This document shows, in pieces, positions 24,273 through 55,600 of a stretch of 64,000 nt of DNA. A model generated the notes under the pieces. It searched no databases, was not told the origin of the DNA, and was given only the letters and a program-made list of their open reading frames with translations. The position numbers and the translations under genes are program-made. The stretch covers positions 143,521 to 207,520 of the IMG/VR virus record IMGVR_UViG_3300044701_003953; one strand, written 5' to 3'. Each line of letters starts with the position of its first letter. Positions within the stretch are counted from its first letter, which is position 1.

Positions 24273-25019
24273 TTATTCTACCGTCACGATCTCGTGGACA
24301 TTTGTGATTATGCCCGGGCTGATCAACTCAACGAATGTGTTTATCGAAATATCGTTGGTGTAATAATATACTCCCCAAAATGAAGAGTAAGACGAAGACA
24401 GCATTTTCCTTGGTGCCGCGGGCAGGCTGACAAGGTCCTCCATCGAAAGCAGGTAATTCAATAAGCTAGATTTCGATGCGGTATCTAATCTACCATCTCG
24501 TAACAATACTTTATAACGGTATTGGTTCCTTCGTGATTTCCTGAGTATCTTGTTTTCTTGTAACATCGGGATATGTTCAGGGCGTGGCACGCTGATAGAA
24601 AACACTCGCGACTGATCGACAGCAGTAAAATGCTCGATCACTTTTTTCAATGAGGTTTCATCCTCTGCGTAGACTTGTATGTACGGTTCTTCGACCCTTA
24701 ACTTGATAGTGTCATCTTTGAGCAGATCCTTGAACACTTCAAGCTGTGCGAGACTAGATTGGTCGAGCGATTTATTGTTACGATATATCCAGCTACCGCC
24801 ATGGTTCCTATGTACCACTCGTGTGTTTATAGATGATGATATATCCTCGTCGTGGATGGCCCTGCCGCCGGGGCAAAACACCCTCATGCGGCACAGATAT
24901 TTTTTAAAAAATATTTTCCGTGTCTCTTCGAAGACGACGACGGAGTTAAGATTGATCCAGTACAATATATCCATTGTTGTCCACGGCTGGTTGTAGTTTA
25001 TAGTCGCCTTTAACATCAA
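24273..25019 (-). CDS. Hypothetical protein (start uncertain)
   Basis: Long ORF filling the gap downstream of clpA. Confidence 0.55.
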   Translation of the reverse strand: MMLKATINYNQPWTTMDILYWINLNSVVVFEETRKIFFKKYLCRMRVFCPGGRAIHDEDISSSINTRVVHRNHGGSWIYRNNKSLDQSSLAQLEVFKDLLKDDTIKLRVEEPYIQVYAEDETSLKKVIEHFTAVDQSRVFSISVPRPEHIPMLQENKILRKSRRNQYRYKVLLRDGRLDTASKSSLLNYLLSMEDLVSLPAAPRKMLSSSYSSFWGVYYYTNDISINTFVELISPGIITNVHEIVTVE

Positions 25020-27231
25020 AGACTACTTCATGATCGACGACACTAACTACTACTGTTGATCCCGGCGATAGCTTTTCAAACAAGATCTTCTTGCTAAGTG
25101 GGACCTTCACCATTTCGTTGATTTTGCGAGCTAACGGACGAGCACCCAACTTGGGATCATACCCAACCTCTGCGAAATAATTAACCGCGGTCTCTGTGAA
25201 ATGCACACGCAGATTCTTATCACTGAGCAGTTCATTCATTTCCGACATGAGCTTGATCACGATCTTCTTCATGCTGAGATGATCCAATTTGCCGAATTTA
25301 CAGATGCCGTCGAGTCGATTGCGGAACTCTGGCTTGAAAAAGTCTTTGACTGCTTTATCATCTTCGCCGACTTTCTGGAAATTCCTACCTATACCGATGG
25401 CATTCTTTTCTGAGTCTGCGGCACCCAGGTTGGAAGTCAATATCACGATAGTGTTGCGGCAATCGGCTTTCTTACCATTGCTGGAAGTGATCATACCCTC
25501 ATCCATGAGGTTCAGTAAGACATTAGTGACATCGGGGTGTGCTTTTTCGATCTCATCAAACAGGATAACAGAGTTAGGATTCTTCTCTACATCGCTGATC
25601 AAGAGTCCGCCACCGAGATTACTATCGTCGTAGCCTACATAGCCCGGGGGAGCACCAATCAGCTTAGATGCCGAATGCTTCTCTTGATATTCGCTCATGT
25701 CATAGCGTAATAATTTCATGCCCAAGTTATCAGCCAGGGCTTTCGCTAGTTCTGTCTTACCTGTGCCAGTGGGGCCGATAAACAGGAAATTGCCAATTGG
25801 TTTGTTGATAGCCTTGAGTCCGGCTTTGCTGACATAGATCTTTTCCAATACTTGGTCAACCACCGAATCTTGTCCAAATACACGATCTTTAATACGATTT
25901 TCAAAATCATCGACGTCCTTGATCTCGTCGCTATCTCCGATCTGATCTGCAGGAATCTTGGTAAACTTGCTGATGGCTTCTACGATCTGGCTCTTGCCCA
26001 CGATCCAATCATTGAGATGTATCTTGGATTTGGCGCAGGCTGTGTCAATAAGATCGATAGCCTTGTCTGGTAGTTTCTTGTCAGTCTGGTATCTCACGCT
26101 GAGATCTACAGCGGCATCGATAGCTTCGTCGGTAATCTTACCTCCGTGAAATTCTTCAAAGTAATTACGCAATCCTCGTAATATGTCTTTGGCCACAACC
26201 GGACTTGGCTCCTCGATCGCCAACCTATGGAATCTGCGCATAAGAGCTCGATCTTTCTCGAAACTCTGTGTGAATTCTTCCCAGGTAGTAGATGCGATTA
26301 CTTTGATGTGACCTTTGCTTAGGGCCGGCTTAATCATGTTAGCAAAGTCTACGCTGGAGTTAGATCCCGAACCGGCACCTCTCATCTGATGCGCTTCGTC
26401 AATGAATAGTATGCACTTACCGATAGCATGTAAAGCCGCGATTACTTCTTTGAGTTTTTCTTCGAATTCGCCACGATATTTGCTGCCGGCTAGTAGTCCG
26501 CCGATGTCGAGATTGTAAACAGTGAAGTCTTTGAGATAATCAGGCACTTCACCGTTGATGATGTTTAATGCTAACCCTTCGGCTATCGCGGTTTTGCCTA
26601 CACCAGGATCGCCCACCATCAAGACATTGCTCTTGTTGCGCTTGGCTAGGATTTGTGTAATTTCGGCTATCTCGACTTCGCGACCAATCACGGGATCGAT
26701 CTTGCCTTTTTCTGCCATCTCATTGAGATTGTCACAGAACTCCTTTAGTATTTCTGCTGCCTTGGCCTTGTTTGATGCCCCGGCTTCTTTTCGTTTGTCT
26801 TGCCAATTTTCGTTGTAATAGTCGACTAATCCGCTGCGGTCGATGCCGTACTTCATCAGAAAATAAGTAGCATGGCTGTTGCCTTCTTGCCATATGCTCA
26901 ACACCAAATCGATGACTTGTATATGAGTGCGTCCCGAGAATAACACCTGAGTGAATGCTCGATTAAACACACGCTCGAGCGCATGTGTTTTTTTAGGAAC
27001 ATCGTCTTTGTCTGCCGAAGCTAGATGCTCTTGTGTTGTCAAGTACATCAACAACTCGTTGGACATGCCCTCGACGTTTACACCATAATTGTTTAGAAAT
27101 TCATTAAAAGGTTTATAGGTCAAAAGACCCTGTAATAGATGCTCTACAGTCACGTATTTGTGTCGTAGTTGGCGTGCTGCTGTAGTGGCATATTCTACGA
27201 TCATTTCTATTTCAGGATTGGGTTGTATCAT
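24946..27231 (-). CDS. clpA: ClpA-type AAA+ chaperone/unfoldase
   Basis: ClpN domain (HKYVTVEHLL), GDPGVGKT, FIDEAH, GPTGTGKT, DMSEYQEKHS, FDEIEKAHP, IGI loop (ClpP-docking type), GARPL. Confidence 0.92.
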   Translation of the reverse strand: MIQPNPEIEMIVEYATTAARQLRHKYVTVEHLLQGLLTYKPFNEFLNNYGVNVEGMSNELLMYLTTQEHLASADKDDVPKKTHALERVFNRAFTQVLFSGRTHIQVIDLVLSIWQEGNSHATYFLMKYGIDRSGLVDYYNENWQDKRKEAGASNKAKAAEILKEFCDNLNEMAEKGKIDPVIGREVEIAEITQILAKRNKSNVLMVGDPGVGKTAIAEGLALNIINGEVPDYLKDFTVYNLDIGGLLAGSKYRGEFEEKLKEVIAALHAIGKCILFIDEAHQMRGAGSGSNSSVDFANMIKPALSKGHIKVIASTTWEEFTQSFEKDRALMRRFHRLAIEEPSPVVAKDILRGLRNYFEEFHGGKITDEAIDAAVDLSVRYQTDKKLPDKAIDLIDTACAKSKIHLNDWIVGKSQIVEAISKFTKIPADQIGDSDEIKDVDDFENRIKDRVFGQDSVVDQVLEKIYVSKAGLKAINKPIGNFLFIGPTGTGKTELAKALADNLGMKLLRYDMSEYQEKHSASKLIGAPPGYVGYDDSNLGGGLLISDVEKNPNSVILFDEIEKAHPDVTNVLLNLMDEGMITSSNGKKADCRNTIVILTSNLGAADSEKNAIGIGRNFQKVGEDDKAVKDFFKPEFRNRLDGICKFGKLDHLSMKKIVIKLMSEMNELLSDKNLRVHFTETAVNYFAEVGYDPKLGARPLARKINEMVKVPLSKKILFEKLSPGSTVVVSVVDHEVVFDVKGDYKLQPAVDNNGYIVLDQS

Positions 27232-27313: not shown

Positions 27314-28162
27314 TTATTGACCTTTTTTGAGTTCTTCTAACAATTCTTTCCGGTGGTGATCGGTCTCTTTGGGAATATAGACTTCGACTTCAACTAAGAG
27401 ATTCCCCCGCGCCCCATTAGTTGAGTATAGTCCTTGATCTTTGATCCTTAATTTAGTTCCGTATTGTGTGCCCGGTGGCACTGTTAATAAAAAAGTCTTG
27501 TTTTCGAGATTGGTTATTTCTCTCTGTGTGCCCAGGATCGCATCGTAGGCTGATATTTTAAGCGAGCAAACGATGTCTGAGTGATGTACTCGGAACCTTG
27601 GGTGCGGAATTAGGCGCACCAATACATAGAGATCTCCGCGCGGCAAGGTACTAAAAAAGTTGTCGCCTAACCCGGGATATTTGATCATTGATCCGTCTTC
27701 GACACCGCGGGGGATATTGATGTTGATTGTTTCTCGGTAACCATTGGTAGTTTGTATCTGTATGGTTTTTCCGACGGGATTTAAAGTTTCCTCAAGACCC
27801 AATCCCATTTCTATCCTGATGTCTTTGTTGCGCCGCGGCTGACGCATGCGTTCAAAGGGATCTTCAGAACGATTCCGGAACCCGAAGTTAAATTGAGTGA
27901 ATATGTCGTCGAGATCGGGCATACCGTCGGTGTCTTGATTCCAACGAAATTGCGGACCGCCGCCAAAACCTTTTCTTTCGAGATCGTATCGTTGTCGAGA
28001 TTCGGGATTACTAAGCACACGATATGCTTCTTCGATACGCTGGAACTCATCCGTATTACCACCTTTATCGGGGTGATGTTTGGACGCTAGGCGGCGATAG
28101 GCTTTTTTAATCTCTTCGGGCGTAGCCGTTTCGGTTACTTTAAGGGTGTCGTAGTGAGACAT
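27314..28162 (-). CDS. DnaJ/CbpA-type co-chaperone without zinc finger
   Basis: J-domain HHPDK; C-terminal RGDLYV..PHPRF. Confidence 0.9.
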
Positions 28163-31280: not shown

Positions 31281-32093
31281 TTAAGTATTTAGCCCTTTTG
31301 TTGCGAGCCAATGTTTCCAACGATCGAATTGGTCAGCCGTGATGAGTTTGCGGGCTTCTCGGTGTATGCTGACAGTCAGCGTATCTTCGCGTTTCATTTC
31401 CTCAAATAATCTTTCAAAATCGTGTTCTTCGCCATGTGTGATATTGACCGGGCGGAATCGCTGTGTCTGGCTATAAGGGCTGTAATCTTTGTGTATCATC
31501 AATACCATGGCAGAATAGAGATTAAACTCAGTTATGAAGTTTGGCTCCATGACGTTTTCGCAGAAAAATTCTACCAAGTTGGGTTTGGCGTAATGTCCGA
31601 TGGTGTTCACGACCCGCCGATCCATGAGATACGGGACACCGCCCGGGCCGACTATCTGATCGATATAAGGTAACCCAAAGTGCTCGAGCAAAAACCTCCA
31701 ACCATGCTCAAACACTGGCTGTATTTTTTGTGTCCTTATGTCGATCTTGCCATCGGGCCCGATGAAGGTATCTAAAGAAAATTCTCGCACGAACCAAGTC
31801 TTGGTGTCTAATACCAACGCCCACTCAGTCGATTCTTTAGCGGCCATGATCTTAGAGATCTGTTGTTGATCCCAGCCAGATGACATTTTAGGTATGCCGT
31901 AATATGTGTAATGCTTTATGTCTACGCGGTCTTGATATCTACCCCACCATGCGGGGTCTATCACGTAATCGTCGTCGTCATTGATGACCACACGTATGCG
32001 ATTTATATCACGTGCGTATAAGTGTATGCTTTGTGCTTGTGTTTTTAATAGATCTAGTTCGTCACGGAATACTACCGTGACTAGGTCCATCAT
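31281..32093 (-). CDS. Glycosyltransferase-like (DUF6492-like) protein
   Basis: GWDQQQISK, LVLDTK, TEFNLY. Confidence 0.5.
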   Translation of the reverse strand: MMDLVTVVFRDELDLLKTQAQSIHLYARDINRIRVVINDDDDYVIDPAWWGRYQDRVDIKHYTYYGIPKMSSGWDQQQISKIMAAKESTEWALVLDTKTWFVREFSLDTFIGPDGKIDIRTQKIQPVFEHGWRFLLEHFGLPYIDQIVGPGGVPYLMDRRVVNTIGHYAKPNLVEFFCENVMEPNFITEFNLYSAMVLMIHKDYSPYSQTQRFRPVNITHGEEHDFERLFEEMKREDTLTVSIHREARKLITADQFDRWKHWLATKGLNT

Positions 32094-32764: not shown

Positions 32765-33170
32765 GGTGTATCTCTTGCATGAGACGCTTGGGCATGACTA
32801 TCTCGACCAGCCACACAGGAACGTGCTTCATCTTGGGCATCTTGGTGCCGGCTTCGAAATCGTCGAGGGATTCTATTTTTTGTGGCACTTCCAGCTGATC
32901 TTTTTTGTAAAACACTTCGCAGCCGTACTCTAAGAGACGCTCGCCGCCCCTGGGGTCGGGCATCATCTTGTAGGGCCACATGAACACACAAGTCACGAAA
33001 TACTTTTCGTAGTGTGGTCCCTGTACCAGCTCACCTTTTTTCCAGTTGTCAAAAACATAGATGTCGAGCTCGTCGATCACACGCTCAAAATCTAGGAGCG
33101 TGTTGAGACTGCTGTCGGTGAGATAGATCTCTCGGGTGTTTTCAATGATGTCTGCGATACTTTGTGCCAT
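32631..33170 (-). CDS. Conserved hypothetical late protein
   Basis: 179-aa ORF; CATAAATA at 33178-33185 ends 7 nt before the ATG. Confidence 0.65.
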   Translation of the reverse strand: MAQSIADIIENTREIYLTDSSLNTLLDFERVIDELDIYVFDNWKKGELVQGPHYEKYFVTCVFMWPYKMMPDPRGGERLLEYGCEVFYKKDQLEVPQKIESLDDFEAGTKMPKMKHVPVWLVEIVMPKRLMQEIHRGSLELEGESIDAEDIEQAYETGADEDVYQSEEGQENAEQQPAA

Positions 33171-33208
33171 AGTACTGTATTTATGCTGATCTAGTTTTTG
33201 TCAAGCAT

Positions 33209-33236
33209 AAAAAAATGCCCCTTGCGGGGCATTTTT
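33209..33236. terminator. Rho-independent terminator at the end of the TTT island
   Basis: AAAATGCCCC-GCAA-GGGGCATTTTTTT on the minus strand. Confidence 0.85.
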
Positions 33237-34071
33237 ATTTGGCGACATAACTCTTGATATATCGATCAATCCACACTTCGACACGATCTAGCAGTGCTTT
33301 ATCGCTGGTGGTGGTTCTTGCTACATAATTTCCTTGGTCTAGTAGACCCACAAATCCCTTGGACTCTAGTGCCGACTTGACTCGAGCACGTTGATCTGCG
33401 CTGTCAACGCCATTGACTAATACCGTGACAGGGATACGCAAATCGGGAATTTTCATCTTAAGCTGTTTTCCGATGTAGTTTTGATCCACAGGATTGGTAC
33501 TGGCCACACATTCAATGGCACCCGAGGACTCTTGTTTCTGCGCAGCAGAAGCACCCAATAGGCCTAGGTCAAGGTCGCCGCTCATGATCTGCAGCAAGAC
33601 ATCCTTGCTGCCTGAAAATGGTAGAGCTTTGATGCTGGTGCCATTTTGTGCATTGATGTCAGCCACGATGGGTCCGGGTTGCATCACTGATGGAATACCA
33701 AAAGTGGCATTGGCAGAACGGAAATTCTTGCCGGATCCTTTTTTGGTGCAGATCTTGAAAAATTGTTCGCCGTAAAACACGATGTTCTTTTCTGTGATCT
33801 GTGGTTTGCAAATCTGCCCTTTGGCAACAGATGCAAAAGCCAGGCTGGTGCCATACACCAGAACACTGTCCTTGGTATCCTGGAACTTCTTGACGCCGTC
33901 GAGACAACTATCAGCTTGGTAAAACTTCGAGCCCGCAAGATTTTCTTGAAGAGTCATAGCAACAGTAGTGGTTGGACTGTTCCTTGATGAAGTAGAAATC
34001 ACTGTGATGTCGGAGGCTTGAGCCATCAAGGGCATAAAGGCAGCAATTACAGCCAATTTGATTTTTTTCAT
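33235..34071 (-). CDS. TctC/Bug-like periplasmic solute-binding protein (copy 2)
   Basis: Signal peptide (AQA|S); PFSGSKDVLLQIMSGDLDLG matches the Bug PYxG...GxxD motif. Confidence 0.65.
   Translation of the reverse strand: MKKIKLAVIAAFMPLMAQASDITVISTSSRNSPTTTVAMTLQENLAGSKFYQADSCLDGVKKFQDTKDSVLVYGTSLAFASVAKGQICKPQITEKNIVFYGEQFFKICTKKGSGKNFRSANATFGIPSVMQPGPIVADINAQNGTSIKALPFSGSKDVLLQIMSGDLDLGLLGASAAQKQESSGAIECVASTNPVDQNYIGKQLKMKIPDLRIPVTVLVNGVDSADQRARVKSALESKGFVGLLDQGNYVARTTTSDKALLDRVEVWIDRYIKSYVAK
33698..33755. repeat. 58-bp exact repeat shared by the two SBP genes (other copy 34532..34589)
   Basis: Direct comparison. A second 41-bp exact block lies at 33569..33609 and 34403..34443. Confidence 0.9.
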
Positions 34072-34074
34072 TTA

Positions 34075-34902
34075 TTATTTCCCGTAGTTTGAATGAGATC
34101 GTTGGATATATGCATTTACATTCTTTACCAGTTCCTCGGAACCTTGGTAAGTCACATTTGCATACTCACCTTTATTTAATAGAGTTTTTACGTCGTTGGA
34201 AATAATTCCTTGTTGTACCAGAGACAGAGCCTTGCTATCTTTGATGTTGTGAAGTATCAAAGTTTGTATGCGGATATCGGGCTGTTTCATTTTCAAAGCA
34301 CTACCTAAAAACTTCGAGCTTTTGGGATCTGTGGATGCGATACACTCGATGGTGCCTAGTTTTTCCTGGGAGGCTGCGGTGCTGGTTCCGATCAGACCGA
34401 GATCAAGGTCGCCGCTCATGATCTGCAGCAAGACATCCTTGCTCCCGGCAAAAGGCACAGGGCGTAGCGTAGTGGCGTTTTGTGCATTGATGTCGGCCAC
34501 GATGGCGTCTACAGGTTGCACAGAGGCCATCCCAAAAGTGGCATTGGCAGAACGGAAATTCTTGCCGGATCCTTTTTTGGTGCAGATCTGATAGTACTGC
34601 TCGCCATAGAACAAGATATTATTGGCTCGGATACTGGTGTCACAGGGTTTGTTTTTTCTCAAACCCGTGATGGCCAAATTGGTTCCATAGACTAGTAGAC
34701 TGTTGTTGGTGCTTTCATATTTGGCCACAGCAGCCTGGCAGCTTTCGCCCTGATGGTACGCACTACCAGGGATATTTTTTTGCACAGTCATGGCCAAAGT
34801 GGCCACCGGCGATGTTTTTGCTTGTGGATTGATTACAAGGGTTTCAGCAGCTACCGAGACCAGCGGCAGGCATGCTAGAGCGGATAAGATGATTTTTTTC
34901 AT
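34075..34902 (-). CDS. TctC/Bug-like periplasmic solute-binding protein (copy 1)
   Basis: Signal peptide; PVPFAGSKDVLLQIMSGDLDLG; paralog of 33235..34071. Confidence 0.65.
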   Translation of the reverse strand: MKKIILSALACLPLVSVAAETLVINPQAKTSPVATLAMTVQKNIPGSAYHQGESCQAAVAKYESTNNSLLVYGTNLAITGLRKNKPCDTSIRANNILFYGEQYYQICTKKGSGKNFRSANATFGMASVQPVDAIVADINAQNATTLRPVPFAGSKDVLLQIMSGDLDLGLIGTSTAASQEKLGTIECIASTDPKSSKFLGSALKMKQPDIRIQTLILHNIKDSKALSLVQQGIISNDVKTLLNKGEYANVTYQGSEELVKNVNAYIQRSHSNYGK

Positions 34903-34920
34903 GGTATTTTTCCTTTTGAA

Positions 34921-36207
34921 TCAGATAGTGGAGATGACCTGTAGAGCAGTCCATATGACTTTGTCCCCCAGGATAAACGCGAATAGCATGGGAATAGGAT
35001 CGATGTTCTTTTTATCTAGTGCATAACCGATCGCGCTAAAAAACAAGAACAAGCAAACATATTTCAATGCTCCCAACTCTGAATAGTAGAAATCTATCAA
35101 CCCCAGGCCTGCTATCAACAACAACAGTATGAATCTAAATCTCGACTGTAGAAACAACAGGGCACGAGCATAGACGTCCAACAAACTGGTACTCAGGAAG
35201 TAGTAGATCACAGCCAGCAACACACAGGCCAGTTGTATGGTCAACAACATACGACCCACTTCTTCGAGATTGGCCAGGTCCGGCCAGTCAATGAGTTTGG
35301 TCTGCAGGATCTGTAACACTATGACTTCACCCACAGTGATGGGTATGCCCACGATCAACAACGGTAACATGCTAGTGATCATGGCCGAGTTGTTGGCCGA
35401 TTCTGCCGAAGTGACTTTTTTACTCAAATCTTTTTCGGTGTGGAACGCCAAGTTGCTGCTCAAAGTCGCCGACGGTCCTGGTATGAGCCCGATCATGCTG
35501 CCAATGACGCCGCCTTTGACAGCACTGGTCCATGGCATATCACCAATCACAGATTCAGCATTACGAGATTGCCATATTTCACTGTCATATTTTTTAAACA
35601 GCTCGGGCACGATCAACAAGCCCAAGGCCATGGAAAAAAACGTGGTGTTCTGGAAAGTCTCTTGTAAGTGATACCAGGCTTCTGGCAAAGCATAATTGTT
35701 TTTTGGGCCCAGTAGAATACCAAACATCACTAACACCAATGCCACCGGTCTGTTTTTACTGAGTAATACAAAAAACAACAATGCGAATCCGAAGATCACG
35801 GCCTTGACCCAGATTTTGTTGAACCAAAACATGAAATCGTACGACCCCAGCACAAACACAGCCACACATGCCACTGATGCAGCCACAGATGCTACCACTG
35901 ATCCACGTGCGGTGTATTTGATCAGTTTGATACGATCTTTGATGCCCAAGGGTTTGATCGAATTCAAGTAGATCAAACTCGACGTTTCGCCAGGTACACC
36001 AGTGGTTATGGCAGCCACGCTGCCAAAATACTGCGACCCAATGATCACGGCTGCCCAGTATAGGAATATGTCAAACACCGACATGAATTCCACAAACGGG
36101 AACATCAACATCATGCCCAAAGCAATAGGCATGGCCGGGAAAAGTCCTACCAACATCCCGGCCATGATTCCTGAAACAAAAGTTATGATTGTTGAAAGTT
36201 CGATCAA
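34921..36207 (-). CDS. TctA-family tripartite tricarboxylate transporter membrane subunit
   Basis: GMLVGLFP, YFGSVAAITTGVPGETSS, IGLIPG, SAESANNSA, PLLIVGIP; many TM segments. Confidence 0.85.
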   Translation of the reverse strand: MIELSTIITFVSGIMAGMLVGLFPAMPIALGMMLMFPFVEFMSVFDIFLYWAAVIIGSQYFGSVAAITTGVPGETSSLIYLNSIKPLGIKDRIKLIKYTARGSVVASVAASVACVAVFVLGSYDFMFWFNKIWVKAVIFGFALLFFVLLSKNRPVALVLVMFGILLGPKNNYALPEAWYHLQETFQNTTFFSMALGLLIVPELFKKYDSEIWQSRNAESVIGDMPWTSAVKGGVIGSMIGLIPGPSATLSSNLAFHTEKDLSKKVTSAESANNSAMITSMLPLLIVGIPITVGEVIVLQILQTKLIDWPDLANLEEVGRMLLTIQLACVLLAVIYYFLSTSLLDVYARALLFLQSRFRFILLLLIAGLGLIDFYYSELGALKYVCLFLFFSAIGYALDKKNIDPIPMLFAFILGDKVIWTALQVISTI

Positions 36208-36265
36208 TTGATTTCTCTATTCGATGTAAAAATTTATCAATGGAAAATCACTGGTGCGCCCCACT

Positions 36266-36955
36266 TCAGTGGGTGGGTTTGAGAGCGCCGGTCTTGCTGG
36301 CCAAGATGAGTTGTGTGCGGTTCTGCACACCGTATCGTCGAATGATGGCCGATACATGACCTTTGACGGTGTCTTCGCTGACCTGTAAGATCTCAGCTAT
36401 CTTGCGATTGGGCAGGCCGCGTTGTGTGATCAACTTGAACACTTCGGCCTGGCGATCCGTGAGACCGATCTCTCGCTTGCGCACCACTGCTCGCTGGAGT
36501 TCGGGTTTGACCACGATGCTGGGCCAGTGGCTTTCACCGCGGGCCAGAGTCTGATATGCTGTCACTGAATGTTCAGCATCAAAGAATCGCATGCCCGGAA
36601 TCACGCCTAGAACATCGTTGCGTTTGAGTTTGGCCAAGAGATCGGCGTCCAGGAGTTCGGGTACTACCACAGCGATGTCCACCCGCTGGCGCTCGGCCAC
36701 GAAGCGCGACAACGATGACAGCATGCTCAACACTTCGTCGATCATCATGTCATTGCGTTCCAGACAGTCCAAGCGGAACACCACCAAGGCGTCCTCGGGC
36801 TCTTCGAGCTGGCGCATGAGATTGGGCCAGCCGGCTGTGATGGTTATGGCGATGCCTACCGCGGCATGATGGTCGACCACACGCTGGATAGACTCCAACT
36901 CGACCTCAGAATCGGTGCTGGGCGAGAAGTAAATGATTTTTCGGGATTTGGCCAT
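36266..36955 (-). CDS. LuxR/NarL-type HTH regulator with divergent N-terminal domain
   Basis: LTDRQAEV..GLPNRKIAEILQVSEDTVKGHVSAI..VQNRTQL. Confidence 0.85.
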   Translation of the reverse strand: MAKSRKIIYFSPSTDSEVELESIQRVVDHHAAVGIAITITAGWPNLMRQLEEPEDALVVFRLDCLERNDMMIDEVLSMLSSLSRFVAERQRVDIAVVVPELLDADLLAKLKRNDVLGVIPGMRFFDAEHSVTAYQTLARGESHWPSIVVKPELQRAVVRKREIGLTDRQAEVFKLITQRGLPNRKIAEILQVSEDTVKGHVSAIIRRYGVQNRTQLILASKTGALKPTH

Positions 36956-37126
36956 TTTGTTGATTTTACTATGACCTGGTGTTGCCTGTCAAGGCCGTAA
37001 ATGCGGGTATGGAGGAATTTGGTTAGCCAAATATTTAGTAGTCAGTGACAAAAAAGAACTCTTCTGTTTTTATACGAGCATATGGGTACCTAAATATCTG
37101 TGTCACTTCCGCCAAAGGAGGCACAC

Positions 37127-37870
37127 TTGACCAAAAGAAAACATCGCGACTCATATTCGCATCATCCGCAAGCCCTTCAACAACAGCACATAGACTACGA
37201 ACATTATCGATCAAATCGACAAAATATACAGCTCATCCCTAAGAGTCTTGGGCAAGAGAGGTATATAGAGTTGCTGACCGACCCAGCACGAACGATCATA
37301 TTCGCCACAGGCCCAGCCGGTACTGGCAAGACCATGTTGGCGGTGTTGGCAGCACTGCGAGCACTCAAGAATGGCGAGTGCAAGAAGATAGTGATCACTA
37401 GACCGGCAGTGGGTGTAGATGACGAGAAGCACGGTTTCCTACCCGGAGACTTGAACCAAAAGATGGAACCCTGGACCCGTCCCATATTCGACTACATGGG
37501 CGAATATATGAGACCCCAGGAAATCGCAAGGATGCTAGACGAACAGATCGTGGAAATTTCCCCACTGGCATTCATGAGAGGACGCACATTTAAAAATGCG
37601 TGGATCATCGCAGACGAAATGCAGAATGCCACGCCCTCGCAGATGAAGATGCTGCTTACGCGACTCGGCGAAGGTTCCCGTATGGTAGTAACTGGTGACA
37701 CGAAACAAGCAGATCGCCAGGACCCTGACAACGGACTACTTGATTTCAAGAAAATAGTAGCAGATTATGATGGAAAATTACTACATATTTCCGGTGTAGA
37801 GTTTGATTATCGTGATATAAAGCGCCACCCAGCGGTGTCAGAAGTACTAAAACTTTACGGTGAAATCTAA
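37127..37870 (+). CDS. phoH: PhoH-family ATPase
   Basis: GPAGTGKT, RPAV, GFLPG, FMRGRT, DEMQN, TGD..Q.D, RH. Start set at TTG 37127 after AGGAGG. Confidence 0.93.
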   Translation: MTKRKHRDSYSHHPQALQQQHIDYEHYRSNRQNIQLIPKSLGQERYIELLTDPARTIIFATGPAGTGKTMLAVLAALRALKNGECKKIVITRPAVGVDDEKHGFLPGDLNQKMEPWTRPIFDYMGEYMRPQEIARMLDEQIVEISPLAFMRGRTFKNAWIIADEMQNATPSQMKMLLTRLGEGSRMVVTGDTKQADRQDPDNGLLDFKKIVADYDGKLLHISGVEFDYRDIKRHPAVSEVLKLYGEI

Positions 37871-37912
37871 AGGTTTTTGCCATAATCATAAATAAAGTTA
37901 TCATATCACTCA

Positions 37913-39016
37913 ATGGAGACTTCCCCAATGACACAATTAACTGGAAAAAATGGACGTAGAAAAGTCCGTTGGATCATAGCTCACTTCCCACTAGAACTGT
38001 TTGTTCGTGCGGCCAAGGCATTTCAGCTCGAAATTGAAAAACTTTGCCCCGGGCAGTTCGACATCGAGATCCATACTATCGGTTCTTATCTAAGAGCTTA
38101 CGGTAACGAACTCACTGAAGAACAGAAAAAGAATCTTGGATTCGTGGCCCCACGTATTCCTGGACTCGAAGATCCCAAGAACACAGTTGCAACTAAAAAC
38201 CCAGACAGCCTAGTTTTTGCTAAAGACTTCAACCAACTCAAAGTTTGGTGGAAGACATTGTTTGAGGTGATGAAAGAGCAGAAGTTTGAGATGAGCCAGA
38301 CACAGGTCAACATCGTTGGTAGCCATCTGCACACCAACTTCCATGCCATCGATCTTCCTTACCTTTTCAAAGATCACGATCACGTAGCTAAAGTACTCGA
38401 CGGCGAAGTCGGACAAAAGATCAGCGACCAAGTAGCAAAAGACACTGGTGTAAAAGCACTGGGTTACACATACTCGGGCGGATATCGAATCATCGGTAGT
38501 ACCGAGGGTATTACAAAACTTGATGATCTTAAAGAAAAGAAATTCATCAGCTTTACTGCACCTAGCAATATGTTGTTCAGACTCGCAGACGTACCACGTC
38601 TTCCACGTTACCTCACAACAGCAGAAGACCTCGGTGATATCGCTGAGCAAGGTGGTGCCATTGAGACCACATATCTGCGCTTTGCTGGTAAGAATGTTCT
38701 TAAAACAAACCACAGCATGTTCATGACATCGATCCTGACCAGCGAAAACTTCATAAATTCGTTAACAGAAGACCAGCGTGCCGCTTTTACAGAAGCTGCA
38801 CATCGTGTTGCCAAAATCGAAAGACTTTGGTCTGTTGAAGATGCCGCCAAGTATGAGCAGGATGCTGAAAGCCGTGGCGTTACTATCGTTCCAGTTAACG
38901 AAGAAGACGACACAAGACTCAGAACAGCAGCCAAGGAAATTTACAAGAAAGAAAATCTTGAGAAGATTGGTATCGACTACACATTAGTAGAAGAAATCAT
39001 CAAACTCGGTAAGTAA
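37913..39016 (+). CDS. TRAP transporter DctP-like solute-binding protein without signal peptide (start probably ATG 37928)
   Basis: DLPYLFKDHDHV..VLDGEVG, GYTYSGGYRII, TNHS; CATAAATA at 37887-37894. Confidence 0.75.
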   Translation: METSPMTQLTGKNGRRKVRWIIAHFPLELFVRAAKAFQLEIEKLCPGQFDIEIHTIGSYLRAYGNELTEEQKKNLGFVAPRIPGLEDPKNTVATKNPDSLVFAKDFNQLKVWWKTLFEVMKEQKFEMSQTQVNIVGSHLHTNFHAIDLPYLFKDHDHVAKVLDGEVGQKISDQVAKDTGVKALGYTYSGGYRIIGSTEGITKLDDLKEKKFISFTAPSNMLFRLADVPRLPRYLTTAEDLGDIAEQGGAIETTYLRFAGKNVLKTNHSMFMTSILTSENFINSLTEDQRAAFTEAAHRVAKIERLWSVEDAAKYEQDAESRGVTIVPVNEEDDTRLRTAAKEIYKKENLEKIGIDYTLVEEIIKLGK

Positions 39017-39028
39017 TATTCTTGCACT

Positions 39029-39060
39029 AATAAAAAACCGCCTCCGGGCGGTTTTTTATT
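39029..39060. terminator. Bidirectional terminator between convergent genes
   Basis: AATAAAAAACCGCC-TCCG-GGCGGTTTTTTATT. Confidence 0.9.
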
Positions 39061-39643
39061 GGCCGACTACTAGCTCGTATATCTCTCGCCAGTCCTTGAC
39101 TTTAGGAATGTCTTCGTGATAGTAGTGCATATTATGACCGTGCTCGACTAGTATCGGTTTAAGTCCTAACATCCAGCCCAATTCGGCATTTGTGACTTTG
39201 TCCTCGATCCACCACAGCCCGGTCTTGCGATAAGGTGCCAGTGCTTCGTCTTTGTCAGCACCAGTATCCAAGCACACTATCTTTTCGAAAACAGTCTCCC
39301 CAAACAGTTTGGCGAGATTCATCTCGCGGAGTCTCTGTGCGTTCCTGTCTAAGCTCAATGACGTGATACAGTGGAATACGAATCCGTGTTCTTCGTGTAG
39401 CCTCTTCACGTAATACATAGCATCACGGAGTGGTGGGAGGAACCCAATAGCGGCACTTTCGTTGAACATCTTGATCAGCTTCTTGCCTTGTGTTTTCGTG
39501 ATGCCGTAACGTTCGCCGATGTCATAGTTGAGTTCTCCACCGGGCACCATCTCGAAGCCATGGTCCTCCATCCAAACAGAAAAGGCATACTCCCAGTTAA
39601 GGAGCACGCCGTCGCAGTCAGTTAAAATAATCCTATTCGTCAT
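39056..39643 (-). CDS. HAD-family phosphatase / 5'-nucleotidase-like
   Basis: DCDGVL, ITSL, K, IEDK. Confidence 0.8.
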   Translation of the reverse strand: MTNRIILTDCDGVLLNWEYAFSVWMEDHGFEMVPGGELNYDIGERYGITKTQGKKLIKMFNESAAIGFLPPLRDAMYYVKRLHEEHGFVFHCITSLSLDRNAQRLREMNLAKLFGETVFEKIVCLDTGADKDEALAPYRKTGLWWIEDKVTNAELGWMLGLKPILVEHGHNMHYYHEDIPKVKDWREIYELVVGQ

Positions 39644-52659: not shown

Positions 52660-55600
52660 TTATTCAAATACTCCAATTTGTGGGAATTTCAAGTATTTAT
52701 CATCTGTTTCGGGCCCTTGATAGTTATCCCGATTATCAAAGAATCGTGTACCATTTCTGTCAAATACGGTGTATCCGCCACTGGTCTCCACGTCTGTTTT
52801 CCAGCGTCGGTAAGTGGGTACAGTCTGGCTTCCGCTGATATTGGTGTCGTAGACCATGAATGTAAAACCATTGGTGACTCCGTTTAATACCTTGATTTTT
52901 TCACCGAACACTACTTCGCGAACAAATTCCAGCGTGACTAAATCTTCGTCGCTGATGTTTATCCTCCAGATTCCCCCTCGCTGGTTATCTATCTCGTAAC
53001 TGATTACTGTGCCCGGGGACACCGCTGATAAGTCATTGTTAGTGATTAATATGTTGTCCCTGACATCAACTACATAGGTATTTGCAGGAATCTTTGGCCC
53101 AAATAATCTCATACCATTAGAAATTCCCAATGGTATCCGGTCAACGGCTACGCCATATGTTATTGTTTCGGCATCGAGGTCATAATTTTCATCAAAAGAT
53201 ACCGATGTCACCGTAGATCTTAGTAAAATCGTTATGCCCGGGCTGACGCTTTTTACAAGTGGTTTGTTCAGAGTCACTGAGACTTCGTTGTTTTCATAGT
53301 TTATCGACTGTGCGATTATTTGTGTCCCGTCGGCGATTCCTAGCGCCGATACAGACTTACCGAGATAAGATACTCCTAATAACCAAGGTAGCACGAGTTC
53401 TGTGTCGCCAGCATTGGCACCGGCTCTTAGCATTTGACTTTCGACCGTCAGAGCTTTATTTTTTATTCCGGGTATCACACTATAAGCATCAAATCCAAAT
53501 TTAGTATCGGTCCCTTCAGAGTCTTGCCCAACGGCTTCGATGTCGCTGCCGTCATTGGGTATATCTCCAATATAAAAGTTTTGATAATCAACCCAGCCAT
53601 CAAAAGGTCCAGTGGGGTTATCATATTCTTCTTGCCTCGCGAATACCAAAAGTTCTCCATGCTCGAAACTCTTGATGCCATCGATTCCGCCGTTATCTTT
53701 TATATATTGCACGGTTCGTTTGTTGATAGAATCGAATGATTGCTCGACAGCATACTCAACGATTCCTCCGCCATGTACTCCCGGGCCCAGTGTAAGTCTG
53801 TCAAACGTGGTCTCTTTGCTGTTCTTGAATTCTCCGATGCTAGGCACAAAATACTTACTAAGAGCACTATCGAGTTGATATCTATCAATGGTGAATTCGA
53901 CTTCGTCAAACCTAATGCCTTTGTTCTTGAGTCGATAAGCGATGAGTTTAGCCGCACCGGGTACAGTATAGGCCAATACCACTGCACGACGGAATCCTAA
54001 CACAGTTCTATCGGGTTGCACCGACGTCATCCAGTCTGGGAATACGCCACGAGCTTGATAACCGAGAGCGTTGATCAGATTATTGTTCATGTTAGCGAAA
54101 GTACTGGGGTAAATCGTCTGATTTTCGAATTGATAAGTTAAATTGGTTTTAGATGTAAAGGTTGGCACAGGACGGCTCACTGTTACCAAACTTTCAGAGA
54201 CTGATAATATTTTAGTCCCTGGCAATATGCCCGGTCCTGTTAAAGTTGCACCAACGATGTCTTCGGAGGGGGATCTATAAAGATTGATCTGTGACCCCGA
54301 CGACGACTGGGCCACGAGTATACCGTTATGTCCGATGTAAGGTTTCCCTCTCAACTCAACTTGTTCGCTAACGGGGGCTTCGGATAGATTGTTGGGGTCA
54401 ATGATTTCTATGTATACTACTTCATATTTGGTATTATAGAATTCATCGACAGCCACAGCAGTTTTGATCTCGCCGAAGTTAATTTGTTTCCAGTAATGAT
54501 TTTTCTCGATAGCAGCGATATAATCGTTTAGATCGCTGGCATTGATTCCGGCCGCCGACAAGAATTTAATAGTAGTCGCCTTGCCAAACCATGGATCCGA
54601 TCTTCTATAGATCAATTCGTCGGGGAATATATCTTGATCATTGATAATCTCAAAAAACTTTTGTCTTTGTTCCAGCGTCGGAAATGCTTTGAAGTAGAGA
54701 TTTTCAAAAGGTTTCTTGTGTACTGGGTCGAGTCGAAGCTTAAATCTCTTGACCGACGAAACCACACCGTCAAGTATATAAACCAAATCTCCTTCCCTGA
54801 TTTCGCCTAACAACAATTGATTTAAAATTAGTTCAGTATAAACTGCTCCGTTGTCGTCGATTTTCTTAAACTGACCTACAATAATAGTGTTTGGAGAAAT
54901 GTTTTTTCCACTAATTTCTTTCAGTCGGAAATCGCTAGATCCCGAATAGGCCAAAAAGATTTTATTAGGATAGGATACTTCTGTCCAGCTAACTGTAGAC
55001 GTGTAGCCATCGAGGCTGATTGTTTCGGATACTTTCTTGGGCGACACGTTCAGGCCCGAAGATTTATAGATTTTCTTAATATTAGCTGTTTCGGCTTTGA
55101 CATCAAATTGATAAAGATTATCAAATCTAGTGCGATTTTTGTCAAAGGTGGTGTTATCTTTATCTAATTGGAAATATCGGAAAGTAGCCCGGCCCGATAT
55201 GATACCATCGTTGATGAGTTGCAAACTCAATGCCTGTGGTAGACGACTCTCGGGGCCCGAAACAAGGCTGTATTTTACTGTCTGCCCTAGTTCACTGACA
55301 GCTTCGATCTTGAGTTCGCTGATTGATCCATTGACGACCGAACCGAGATTTTCGGGAGTTTTCCATATTATACGATCAGTGAGACTTCCTAACACAGTCA
55401 GGCTATACTGTATAGGTTCACTACGATATAAACCTTCGGCAGTGGAAGATCTCAAGATAACGATATCGCCAACTCCGATATCAGAAATCAGTGCTTGGTC
55501 AAGGACGACCCGGGTGATCATTGCTGGATCATCGATCGTGCCGGTATTGACGATCTCTTCTCTGAGGATCTTAGTGCCTTCTGGTATACCGCCTACAATG

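What the first reader, a model, noticed from the sequence alone, without database searches (positions are those of the whole stretch)
33235..36955. Phage-borne LuxR + TctA + two Cys-containing TctC-like receptors
Seen: a co-oriented four-gene island ending in a strong terminator, with no TctB and no histidine kinase. Both binding proteins are secreted, highly diverged from typical Bug proteins, and share four Cys in the mature region (likely two disulfides). The LuxR N-terminal domain lacks a clear receiver signature. Established: TTT systems import carboxylates and can signal through the binding protein. Inference: a phage-encoded import-and-sense circuit (metabolite or communication signal to transcription), rather than plain nutrient uptake.
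Basis: partly seen in the sequence, partly recalled or inferred. Interest (0 to 1): 0.72.

Follow-up and report, generated by a model that had tools for sequence, protein, structure and literature searches.

The report
Phage TctB-less tricarboxylate-type transporter operon
A freshwater jumbo phage carries an operon for an unusual two-part nutrient importer (a membrane channel plus two secreted, cysteine-bearing binding proteins) that belongs to a largely virus-specific branch of a known bacterial transporter family, and the regulator gene at its head is an optional add-on rather than a core part.

Summary
On the minus strand, 36955..33235 carries luxR-type regulator, short TctA and two paralogous secreted binding proteins, from a near-consensus promoter to a strong terminator, inside a jumbo-phage record.

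The binding proteins have no Pfam hit. Their AlphaFold model matches Bug/TctC receptors first, four Cys are near-invariant across 87 family representatives, and a complex prediction with controls supports docking on TctA (0.66 vs 0.00). No TctB or histidine kinase was found.

- **Core unit:** short TctA followed by a four-Cys binding protein recurs in all 26 non-redundant loci examined, mostly large viral contigs. It was found in none of about 800 sampled bacterial genomes apart from small phage-like contigs of one Polynucleobacter MAG. The nearest ESM Atlas clusters are 77-100% viral.
- **Third partner:** a signal-peptide-less DctP-like gene lies beside the cassette in 14 of 26 loci, including this window.
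- **LuxR is accessory:** four relative contigs keep the same promoter but lack it. It is also missing from five other cassette-bearing phage records.
- **LuxR domain:** its N-domain is a pseudo-receiver that keeps only the Asp.

Best reading: a virus-typical, TctB-less TTT-like importer of an unknown anionic solute, with an optional regulator. The "sense circuit" idea is only weakly supported.

The parts
36963..36992 (-). Sigma-70-type promoter TTGACA-18-TAAAAT (11 of 12 matches). Its -10 element ends 7 nt before the luxR ATG, so luxR is probably leaderless or nearly so.
   Evidence: The promoter is conserved in L012, L013 and L043. The same promoter drives tctA directly, with a leader of about 55 nt, in the LuxR-less L001 and L004.
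36266..36955 (-). NarL/FixJ-architecture regulator with a pseudo-receiver N-domain and a GerE/LuxR-type HTH. It is an accessory first gene of the operon.
   Evidence: Pfam GerE E 2.7e-13. The AF2 model has pLDDT 86 and a (beta-alpha)5 fold. Foldseek top hits are LiaR, VpsT, VraR and RcsB. D63 is invariant, but there is no acidic pair after beta1, no Thr/Ser after beta4 and no Lys after beta5. dN/dS is 0.10 against L043.
34921..36207 (-). Short (428 aa) TctA-family membrane permease with a TTG start.
   Evidence: Pfam PF01970 E 5.1e-34, profile positions 3-422 of 423. There are many hydrophobic segments. The G-x3-G-x2-P motifs are invariant in both halves: G17, G21, P24 and G236, G240, P243, G244, P245. 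About 140 relatives of 424-445 aa share 31-77% identity, against 24-26% to canonical TctA of about 500 aa.
34075..34902 (-). SBP1: secreted four-Cys TctC/Bug-fold solute receptor.
   Evidence: No Pfam or NCBIfam hit. The AF2 model has pLDDT 86. The top 17 Foldseek PDB hits are all Bug/TctC proteins, TM 0.59-0.68. A complex prediction with TctA scored 0.66 against 0.00 for the best control.
33235..34071 (-). SBP2: a paralogue of SBP1 (49% identity) with the same four Cys. It diverges in the predicted domain-2 loop (GIPSVMQP against GMASVQPV).
   Evidence: SBP1-type and SBP2-type orthologues are both kept across the phage clade.
33211..33236 (-). Intrinsic terminator AAAAATGCCCCGCAAGGGGCATTTTT followed by a T-run, closing the operon.
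37913..39016 (+). DctP-family (TRAP-type) binding protein without a signal peptide, divergently transcribed downstream of PhoH. It is a probable third, cytoplasmic partner; this is inferred from co-occurrence only.
   Evidence: Pfam PF03480 E 3.5e-26. The best PDB sequence match is the DctP 4xfe at 4e-14, and the carboxylate-clamp Arg is retained. A homologue lies within about 1 kb of the cassette in 14 of 26 loci, and all 14 lack a signal peptide. The nearest Atlas clusters are 100% viral.
37100..37870 (+). PhoH-like ATPase, the divergent neighbour. It is context shared only within the window's own phage clade.
   Evidence: Pfam PF02562 E 1.4e-68. It neighbours the cassette only in the window clade.

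Best explanation
The island is one operon of a freshwater jumbo phage: a sigma-70-type promoter, a probably leaderless luxR, then tctA, sbp1, sbp2 and an intrinsic terminator.

Its functional core is tctA plus the binding-protein genes. [quoted passage not shown]

Proposed mechanism, with each step marked:
1. During infection the two SBPs are exported by Sec to the host periplasm (sequence feature).
2. They are stabilised by disulfides (inferred from four conserved Cys).
3. Each captures a small anionic solute, probably a carboxylate, and the two paralogues have different specificities (inferred).
4. They dock on the periplasmic face of the short TctA (supported by a controlled complex prediction).
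5. TctA imports the solute using an ion gradient, without a TctB subunit (inferred from family knowledge).
6. A cytoplasmic DctP-fold protein encoded next door probably binds the same or a derived carboxylate inside the cell (inferred from co-occurrence and the retained Arg clamp).

The net effect would be phage-directed acquisition of a nutrient or precursor, that is, an auxiliary metabolic module.

The LuxR-type protein is a phosphorylation-independent pseudo-receiver regulator. It is an optional, lineage-specific addition, and probably tunes this operon or host genes.
For: Shown:
- Gene order, promoter and terminator.
- TctA family membership.
- Bug/TctC fold of the SBPs: Foldseek PDB top 17 hits, AFDB clusters and Atlas structure hits.
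- A sequence bridge to TctC: the family profile hits solved TctC sequences at 3.8e-6 and 1.1e-5, and 16 of 87 family members hit PF03401.
- The short-TctA to four-Cys-SBP pair is contiguous in 26 of 26 non-redundant loci.
- Purifying selection on all four genes, dN/dS 0.07-0.14, although dS is saturated in most pairs.
- The complex prediction scored 0.66 against a best control of 0.00. That mark was reached by 58 of 80 solved complexes and 2 of 110 mismatched pairs.
- The predicted TctA contact residues 169-187 coincide with the subfamily's conserved PKNNYALP..W..Q motif.
- No TctB was found in this record or in five other cassette-bearing phage records, one of them 89% complete.
- One clearly cellular locus (L010: guaB, guaA, TctA, SBP, tadA) also has no room for a TctB gene.

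Virus bias:
- 22 IMG/VR contigs carry the cassette. Among 185,579 GTDB species genomes the pattern scan found 2 loci, both on one MAG.
- None of 400 same-family genomes and none of 400 same-phylum genomes had a match.
- Atlas clusters are 77-100% viral.

LuxR is optional.
Against: - No ligand, transport or expression data exist, and no RNA run was listed.
- TctB is poorly conserved (review PMC5812351), and the Pfam model exceeded its cut-off in only 3 of 14 control genomes. A divergent TctB, or use of a host TctB, cannot be excluded.
- The record is about 59% complete.
- The complex predictor used my own alignments, so its calibration holds only roughly.
- TctB-less archaeal TctA proteins may have a non-carboxylate role. 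They are essential for natural transformation in Methanococcus (PMC10133366).
- The role of the cytoplasmic DctP-like protein rests on co-occurrence alone.
- The Polynucleobacter host assignment rests on binning of small contigs.
Confidence: 0.6

Rival explanations
1. One reading: an import-and-sense circuit. A metabolite or communication signal is imported by TctA and the SBPs, or sensed by them, and is relayed to the LuxR-type regulator to set phage transcription. The relay might run through the cytoplasmic DctP-like protein or through direct binding to the pseudo-receiver.
For: - luxR is the first gene of the same transcription unit.
- LuxR and its promoter are the best-conserved segment between the window and L043 (89% nt against 74-76% in the flanks). 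They stayed adjacent to a swapped, 35%-identical TctA-SBP cassette.
- LuxR homologues in another phage clade flank TctC-like and DctP-like genes.
- The pseudo-receiver lacks the phosphorylation pocket, as in ligand-regulated atypical regulators such as VpsT, a top structural hit.
- No kinase was found in the record.
Against: - L001, L002, L004 and L005 keep the promoter, tctA and both SBPs without luxR or any remnant of it.
- Of 26 cassette loci, 23 have no LuxR nearby.
- Five large cassette-bearing phage records have none anywhere.
- The conserved upstream palindrome is also present, in degenerate form, in LuxR-less relatives.
- There is no evidence for ligand binding by the N-domain.
Confidence: 0.2
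2. A hybrid system that depends on host parts. The phage SBPs, the phage TctA, or both work only together with the host's TTT components (host TctB, or host TctAB for the SBPs), re-targeting the host's carboxylate uptake rather than forming a self-sufficient transporter.
For: - Canonical TTT systems have three parts (PMC5812351).
- Another phage clade carries TctC-like SBPs with no TctA within 10 kb, which implies use of host permeases there.
- The candidate host group (Burkholderiales, from the Polynucleobacter MAG hint) is known, from my own knowledge and from PMC5812351, for many orphan Bug/TctC receptors.
Against: - The four-Cys SBP always travels with its own short TctA (26 of 26 loci).
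- The pair is predicted to dock specifically.
- The cellular example L010 also lacks a linked TctB.
- The SBPs are only 10-15% identical to canonical TctC, so cross-docking on a host TctA is not expected.
Confidence: 0.1
3. A non-uptake role. The membrane protein and periplasmic proteins serve in superinfection exclusion, envelope remodelling, export, or nucleic-acid passage, by analogy with the TctB-less archaeal TctA needed for natural transformation.
For: - The archaeal TctA-like protein MMJJ_13030 is essential for transformation and lacks TctB and TctC (PMC10133366).
- The cassette sits beside virion and lysis genes.
- It is a hot spot of replacement and duplication, as is typical of host-interaction loci.
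Against: - The SBPs keep a complete two-lobe type II binding-protein fold, closest to the carboxylate receptors.
- Ser and Gly residues at helix N-termini are invariant, as expected for anion binding.
- The co-occurring DctP-like protein keeps the carboxylate-clamp Arg.
- A strong terminator separates the operon from the virion genes.
Confidence: 0.07

Closest known systems
Canonical TTT systems: Salmonella TctCBA and Bordetella BctCBA (TC 2.A.80; review PMC5812351)
   Same: Both have a TctA-family permease (PF01970) with the duplicated G-x3-G-x2-P motif, plus periplasmic type II binding proteins of the Bug/TctC fold encoded beside it. Both have a linked transcription regulator.
   Different: - There is no TctB.
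- TctA is about 70 aa shorter and only 24-26% identical to canonical TctA.
- The gene order is TctA then SBP, rather than tctC-tctB-tctA.
- The SBPs miss the Pfam TctC threshold and carry four conserved Cys at new positions.
- The regulator is a NarL-type pseudo-receiver without a kinase, not the TctD/TctE or BctD/BctE two-component pair.
- The family is predominantly viral.
Bug-family receptors with solved structures (Bug27 2qpq, BugE 2dvz, BugD 2f5x, MatC 6hke, TphC 7ndr, AdpC 5oei)
   Same: They are the best structural matches (E 1e-10 to 1e-13, TM 0.59-0.68), with the same size and two-lobe topology.
   Different: Sequence identity is 10-15%. Some Bug proteins have a single optional domain-2 disulfide (PMC5812351), whereas this family has four near-invariant Cys. 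The ligand is unknown.
Stand-alone archaeal TctA-like proteins (arCOG04469; Methanococcus MMJJ_13030)
   Same: They are TctA homologues that work without a linked TctB and have fewer predicted helices (PMC5898192, PMC10133366).
   Different: The archaeal proteins also lack TctC, whereas the phage TctA is always paired with a dedicated SBP. The only role shown for the archaeal proteins so far is in DNA uptake.
Phage-borne binding-protein and transport auxiliary genes. Cyanophage pstS is from my own knowledge. The 'tctA, domain hit only' call in SUP05 viral contigs is from PMC4164917. 'PBP2_Bug_TTT' entries of uncultured Caudovirales in BFVD are.
   Same: These are phages that carry host-type solute-uptake parts, presumably to boost acquisition during infection.
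   Different: Here a complete permease-plus-receptor cassette belongs to a virus-dominated clade. It has duplicated receptors, undergoes cassette swapping and has a cytoplasmic DctP-like companion. The papers I could search do not describe this.
Atypical NarL/FixJ-family regulators with degenerate receivers (for example Vibrio cholerae VpsT, 3kln/3klo)
   Same: Both have a receiver fold plus a GerE HTH and lack the full phosphorylation pocket. VpsT is a top structural hit.
   Different: The VpsT c-di-GMP W[F/L/M][T/S]R motif is not evident. The family here has an invariant W144-P145 instead. Any ligand is unknown, and the phospho-acceptor-position Asp is retained.
TRAP-transporter DctP receptors (PF03480)
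   Same: The neighbouring 367-aa protein matches DctP-family structures and keeps the conserved Arg.
   Different: It has no signal peptide in any of the 14 phage homologues. No DctQ or DctM gene was found. It is associated with a TTT-type permease rather than a TRAP permease.

Membership tests
Tripartite tricarboxylate transporter (TTT, TC 2.A.80) | Large membrane subunit of the TctA family (PF01970) with repeated G-x3-G-x3-G-x2-P-G motifs in both halves | tested here: met
   PF01970 E 5.1e-34 covering profile positions 3-422 of 423. G17, G21, P24 and G236, G240, P243, G244, P245 are invariant in 30 subfamily members. The motif definition is from PMC5812351.
Tripartite tricarboxylate transporter (TTT, TC 2.A.80) | Small 4-5-helix membrane subunit TctB (PF07331), separate or fused | tested here: not met
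   There is no PF07331 match at E<=10 in the 207.5-kb record, or at E<=1 in five other cassette-bearing phage records. The intergenic gaps of 58, 18 and 3 nt leave no room, and TctA is shorter than canonical rather than fused. Caveats: TctB is poorly conserved, and the record is about 59% complete.
Tripartite tricarboxylate transporter (TTT, TC 2.A.80) | Periplasmic receptor recognisable by sequence as TctC/Bug (PF03401) | tested here: not met
   Neither SBP gave a Pfam or NCBIfam hit at E<=0.01 or E<=1 respectively. Only an indirect bridge exists: 16 of 87 family representatives hit PF03401 weakly, and the family profile hits solved TctC sequences at 3.8e-6.
Tripartite tricarboxylate transporter (TTT, TC 2.A.80) | Periplasmic receptor with the Bug/TctC type II binding-protein fold and a signal peptide | tested here: met
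   The AF2 model has pLDDT 86. The top 17 Foldseek PDB hits are all Bug/TctC proteins, and AFDB and Atlas hits are TctC clusters. Sec-type N-termini are conserved in alignment A1.
Tripartite tricarboxylate transporter (TTT, TC 2.A.80) | The receptor docks on the permease | tested here: inconclusive
   The complex prediction scored 0.66 against a best control of 0.00. That mark was reached by 58 of 80 solved complexes and 2 of 110 mismatched pairs. This supports binding but does not show it, and my own alignments were used.
Tripartite tricarboxylate transporter (TTT, TC 2.A.80) | Ion-gradient-driven uptake of a carboxylate | not testable with these tools
   This needs ligand-binding and uptake assays.
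NarL/FixJ-type two-component response regulator | C-terminal GerE/LuxR-type HTH | tested here: met
   PF00196 E 2.7e-13. The family profile hits VraR and NarL at 1.6e-15 and 3.4e-14.
NarL/FixJ-type two-component response regulator | N-terminal (beta-alpha)5 receiver fold | tested here: met
   The AF2 secondary-structure order is b1-a1 through b5-a5 over residues 6-138. Foldseek hits are full-length LiaR, VpsT, VraR and RcsB.
NarL/FixJ-type two-component response regulator | Complete phosphorylation pocket: acidic pair after beta1, Asp after beta3, Thr/Ser after beta4 and Lys after beta5 | tested here: not met
   Only D63, after beta3, is present and invariant. Beta1 is followed by YFSP or YFCP, beta4 ends in VVVP, and beta5 ends in IPG.
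NarL/FixJ-type two-component response regulator | Cognate histidine kinase | tested here: not met
   There is no HATPase_c match at E<=1 in the record. A host kinase cannot be excluded.
LuxR-type quorum-sensing receptor (autoinducer-binding domain) | N-terminal autoinducer-binding domain (PF03472) | tested here: not met
   No such Pfam hit was found. The N-domain is a receiver fold. SdiA, LasR and RhlR match only over the HTH.
TRAP transporter DctP receptor (for the neighbouring gene at 37913..39016) | DctP domain, export signal, and DctQ/DctM permease partners | tested here: not met
   The domain is present (PF03480 E 3.5e-26). There is no signal peptide in this protein or in 13 phage homologues, and no DctM in the record. 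The fold and sequence membership hold, but the system membership does not.

The most novel reading that the evidence does not exclude
A virus-specific, three-compartment 'catch, pass and hold' uptake system. A disulfide-braced periplasmic TctC-like receptor hands an organic anion to a TctB-less TctA. On the inside, a cytoplasmic DctP-fold protein takes it over, as a sink, a chaperone or a sensor. In some phages the loaded cytoplasmic binder or the solute itself controls the LuxR pseudo-receiver. This would be the first secondary transporter with binding proteins on both sides of the membrane, and a phage-made nutrient or signal input to transcription.
Probability: 0.15. Interest if true: 0.85.

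Novelty: new variant of a known kind. Interest (0 to 1): 0.62.

Why it matters
TTT transporters are among the least understood solute-uptake families. The role of TctB is unknown, and at the time of the 2018 review (PMC5812351) no structure of the TctA or TctB membrane subunits had been solved.

- **A natural test case for TctB.** This is a compact, two-gene branch that works without a linked TctB and recurs in many large phages. It offers a way to ask whether TctA plus a receptor is sufficient for transport.
- **A widespread phage module.** It suggests that freshwater jumbo phages systematically bring their own high-affinity uptake machinery. That machinery is diversified by duplication and cassette swapping, which bears on how phages reprogram carbon or precursor acquisition in oligotrophic bacteria.
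- **An unexplained third component.** The consistently signal-less DctP-like companion fits no known transporter scheme.
- **A correction for annotation.** The result also argues against reading the adjacent LuxR gene as a core sensing element.

Tried and rejected
- **GenBank phages.** Megablast of the 6.1-kb region and tblastn of SBP1 found nothing. TctA gave only four weak partial hits. No cultured close relative is available.
- **NCBIfam.** No hit for TctA or either SBP.
- **A1 profile against PDB sequences.** Only a chance-level HisG-like hit. The broader A2 profile was needed to reach TctC.
- **The search for related loci with A2.** It failed because the alignment was too divergent. A1 found only one other IMG/VR contig. 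The TctA alignment A4 was used instead.
- **Is the 266-aa ORF beside TctA in L008 a second SBP?** No (hhalign probability 0.1). It is weakly 2OG-oxygenase-like.
- **Rfam scan of 32900-39200.** Nothing credible, so no riboswitch was found. The window has no tRNAs.
- **Is TTTACGGYCTTGACA a general phage promoter motif?** It occurs only once in the window.
- **Is the palindrome ATTTGGTTAGCCAAAT a LuxR operator?** Rejected as LuxR-specific, because a degenerate copy also sits in LuxR-less relatives.
- **RNA runs for expression.** None was listed.
- **Disulfide pairing.** Not checkable, because model coordinates are not exposed.
- **Misassembled bacterial DNA.** Rejected. The island is flanked on both sides by phage genes, and the same synteny recurs in independent assemblies.
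- **Literature searches.** Searches for phage TTT, TctC or DctP modules returned only the SUP05 'domain hit only' note.

Full report
**What is there.**
- The window is the last 64 kb of a single 207,520-bp IMG/VR virus record that CheckV rates about 59% complete.
- Four ORFs on the minus strand fill the reported coordinates exactly:
  - a 229-aa regulator at 36955..36266;
  - a 428-aa TctA at 36207..34921;
  - binding proteins of 275 aa (34902..34075) and 278 aa (34071..33235).
- Pfam confirms a GerE/LuxR HTH (2.7e-13) and a full-length TctA domain (5.1e-34). It gives nothing for either binding protein. NCBIfam also gives nothing for TctA or the SBPs.
- The flanks are phage genes. Downstream lie two virion-protein PHROGs, a DUF6492 protein and a GH19 endolysin. 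Upstream, in divergent orientation, lie PhoH and a DctP-family protein.
- A virion protein ties the phage distantly to PA5oct, Atu_ph07 and Vibrio 2.275.O-type jumbo phages.
- GC content across the island matches the rest of the window.
- Runs holding the sequence are freshwater metagenomes.

**Operon structure.**
- A near-consensus promoter (TTGACA-18-TAAAAT, 36992..36963) ends 7 nt before the luxR ATG, so the luxR message is probably leaderless.
- The operon ends in an 11-pair hairpin with a T-run at 33236..33211, overlapping the SBP2 stop.
- The promoter is conserved in related contigs. In relatives without luxR the same promoter sits about 55 nt upstream of tctA. luxR is therefore an insertion or deletion between a fixed promoter and tctA.

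**The binding proteins.**
- SBP1 and SBP2 are 49% identical and have Sec-type signal peptides.
- A word-indexed search of 5.8 billion proteins found only 16 close relatives, all unannotated. C55, C87, C107 and C187 are invariant among them.
- A full HMM search of 1.84 billion cluster representatives found 110 representatives. In an alignment of 87 of them, the same four Cys are the only columns at least 90% conserved.
- The AlphaFold model (pLDDT 86) matches Bug/TctC receptors first. The top 17 PDB hits are Bug27, BugE, BugD, MatC, TphC, TBP, AdpC and a Polaromonas TctC, at TM 0.59-0.68 and 10-15% identity. Phosphonate and molybdate binders come lower. AFDB and ESM Atlas agree.
- Two results bridge the family to TctC by sequence. 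Sixteen of the 87 members hit Pfam TctC weakly, and the family profile hits solved TctC sequences at 3.8e-6 and 1.1e-5.
- The proteins are therefore a diverged, four-Cys subfamily of TctC-fold receptors. I could not verify the disulfide pairing.

**The permease and the missing TctB.**
- The phage TctA belongs to a subfamily of 424-445 aa that shares 31-77% identity with it. Canonical TctA of about 500 aa is only 24-26% identical.
- The duplicated Gly/Pro motif described for TTT permeases (PMC5812351) is invariant in both halves.
- No TctB was detected in this record or in five other large cassette-bearing phage records, one of them 89% complete. The operon has no room for one.
- A cellular example lies between guaA and tadA and likewise has only TctA and an SBP.
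- A complex prediction with controls supports docking of mature SBP1 on TctA. The score was 0.66 against a best control of 0.00, a mark reached by 58 of 80 solved complexes and 2 of 110 mismatched pairs. It used my own alignments, so those counts hold only roughly.
- The predicted TctA contacts (169-187) fall on the subfamily's conserved PKNNYALP..W..Q segment. The SBP contacts include or adjoin three of the four Cys positions.

**Distribution.**
- A pattern-plus-tblastn scan found the short TctA in 22 IMG/VR contigs, several of 110-317 kb.
- In 185,579 species-representative bacterial and archaeal genomes, the same scan found it on only two small contigs of one uncultured Polynucleobacter MAG.
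- In my own hmmsearch of all fetched loci, every short TctA is followed directly by a four-Cys SBP, in 26 of 26 non-redundant loci.
- The SBP profile found no match in 400 sampled genomes of that MAG's family or in 400 of its phylum.
- The nearest ESM Atlas clusters are viral for all three proteins: SBP 100%, TctA 77-94%, DctP-like 100%.
- BFVD already lists 'PBP2_Bug_TTT' proteins of uncultured Caudovirales.
- The only literature trace I found is a 'tctA, domain hit only' auxiliary-gene call in SUP05 viral contigs (PMC4164917).

**A third partner.**
- A DctP-family gene lies within about 1 kb of the cassette in 14 of 26 loci, including this window at 37913..39016.
- All 14 start directly at the mature domain, with no signal peptide and no Tat motif.
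- The window's copy aligns to solved DctP receptors and retains the carboxylate-clamp Arg.
- No DctM is present in the record.
- A cytoplasmic DctP-fold protein travelling with a TTT-type cassette is unexplained. I infer that it binds the imported solute inside the cell.

**LuxR.**
- The model (pLDDT 86) shows a (beta-alpha)5 receiver fold joined to the HTH. The best structural matches are LiaR, VpsT, VraR and RcsB.
- Among 24 homologues, D63 at the phospho-acceptor position is invariant. The acidic pair, the Thr/Ser and the Lys of the phosphorylation pocket are all absent.
- No kinase is encoded in the record. This is a pseudo-receiver regulator, not an autoinducer-type LuxR.
- LuxR sits upstream of tctA in the window, L006, L012, L013 and L043.
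- It is absent without remnant from L001, L002, L004 and L005.
- It is absent near the other 20 or so cassettes, and absent from five whole cassette-bearing records.
- Two observations keep a functional link alive:
  - L043 is the same phage lineage (LuxR 92% aa identical, 89% nt; flanks 74-76% nt), yet its TctA-SBP cassette is a different one (35% identity, one SBP). It was swapped exactly between the luxR stop and the virion gene.
  - LuxR homologues in another phage clade lie next to secreted, canonical-looking TctC-like genes and signal-less DctP-like genes, with no TctA within 10 kb.

**Selection and dynamics.**
- All four genes show dN/dS of about 0.07-0.14, although dS is saturated except for LuxR against L043.
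- The locus varies by luxR presence or absence, SBP copy number (one, two or three), tandem cassettes (L040) and whole-cassette replacement. This behaviour is typical of accessory host-interaction loci.

**Verdict.**
- The best-supported reading is a virus-typical, TctB-less TTT-like importer for an unknown anionic solute. It has two receptors of probably different specificity, a probable cytoplasmic DctP-fold companion, and an optional pseudo-receiver regulator.
- The import-and-sense reading is possible but is not what the comparative data favour.
- Host assignment to Polynucleobacter is only a hint. It rests on MAG binning, the freshwater source and similar GC.

Noticed in passing
window 37913..39016 (+): A DctP-family (TRAP-type) binding protein with no signal peptide and a retained carboxylate-clamp Arg. 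Signal-less homologues accompany the short-TctA cassette in 14 of 26 loci, and the nearest Atlas clusters are 100% viral. No DctQ or DctM was found. A cytoplasmic DctP-fold partner of a TTT-type cassette is unexplained.
   Followed up: partly
window 24946..27231 (-) and 27314..28162 (-): A phage-borne ClpB-like disaggregase (761 aa: Clp_N, two AAA modules, ClpB_D2-small) lies next to a DnaJ (J-domain plus DnaJ_C). The pair is conserved in relatives L001, L003 and L004.
   Followed up: partly
L043 (uncultured Polynucleobacter MAG contig CAYVBV010000091.1) against window 33187..36259: L043 is the same phage lineage: LuxR is 92% aa identical and the flanks are 74-89% nt identical. Its TctA-SBP cassette has been replaced by a 35%-identical one with a single SBP, bounded by the luxR stop and the virion gene. 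Two further contigs of the same MAG (C94, containing L042, and C45) carry strong SBP-family matches, so three of its contigs in all carry them. This is a possible host hint or a binning artefact.
   Followed up: partly
L012:4431-7021 and L040:3790-8121: The cassette expands by duplication. L012 has three SBP genes in a row, and L040 has two tandem TctA-SBP cassettes.
   Followed up: no
window 36963..36992 (-) and 36260..36273 (-): The promoter's -10 element ends 7 nt before the luxR ATG, and no Shine-Dalgarno sequence is evident, so the message is probably leaderless. A short hairpin, CCCAC-TGAA-GTGGG, has the luxR stop codon in its loop. It is conserved in L006 and L043 and imperfect in L012. 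It could be a processing or attenuation site between luxR and tctA.
   Followed up: partly
window 37017..37032: A perfect palindrome, ATTTGGTTAGCCAAAT, lies in the PhoH/luxR divergent promoter region and is unique in the window. Degenerate copies are present in both LuxR-plus and LuxR-less relatives, so it is probably not a LuxR-specific operator.
   Followed up: partly
L014:4953-8684; L016:7821-10945 and L016:15105-16539: Another phage clade carries two secreted, canonical-looking TctC-like proteins (with the PGAGG motif but without the four-Cys pattern) and a signal-less DctP-like protein. One or two LuxR-family homologues lie beside them or about 4 kb away. No TctA lies within 10 kb.
   Followed up: partly
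window 31281..32093 (-): A DUF6492 protein sits between the virion-protein genes and the endolysin. It is present in most relatives of the clade but appears to be missing in L043.
   Followed up: no
window 52660..57432 (-): A 1590-aa protein with a He_PIG Ig-like domain and a CBM_5_12 carbohydrate-binding module. It is probably a tail fibre or host-recognition protein.
   Followed up: no
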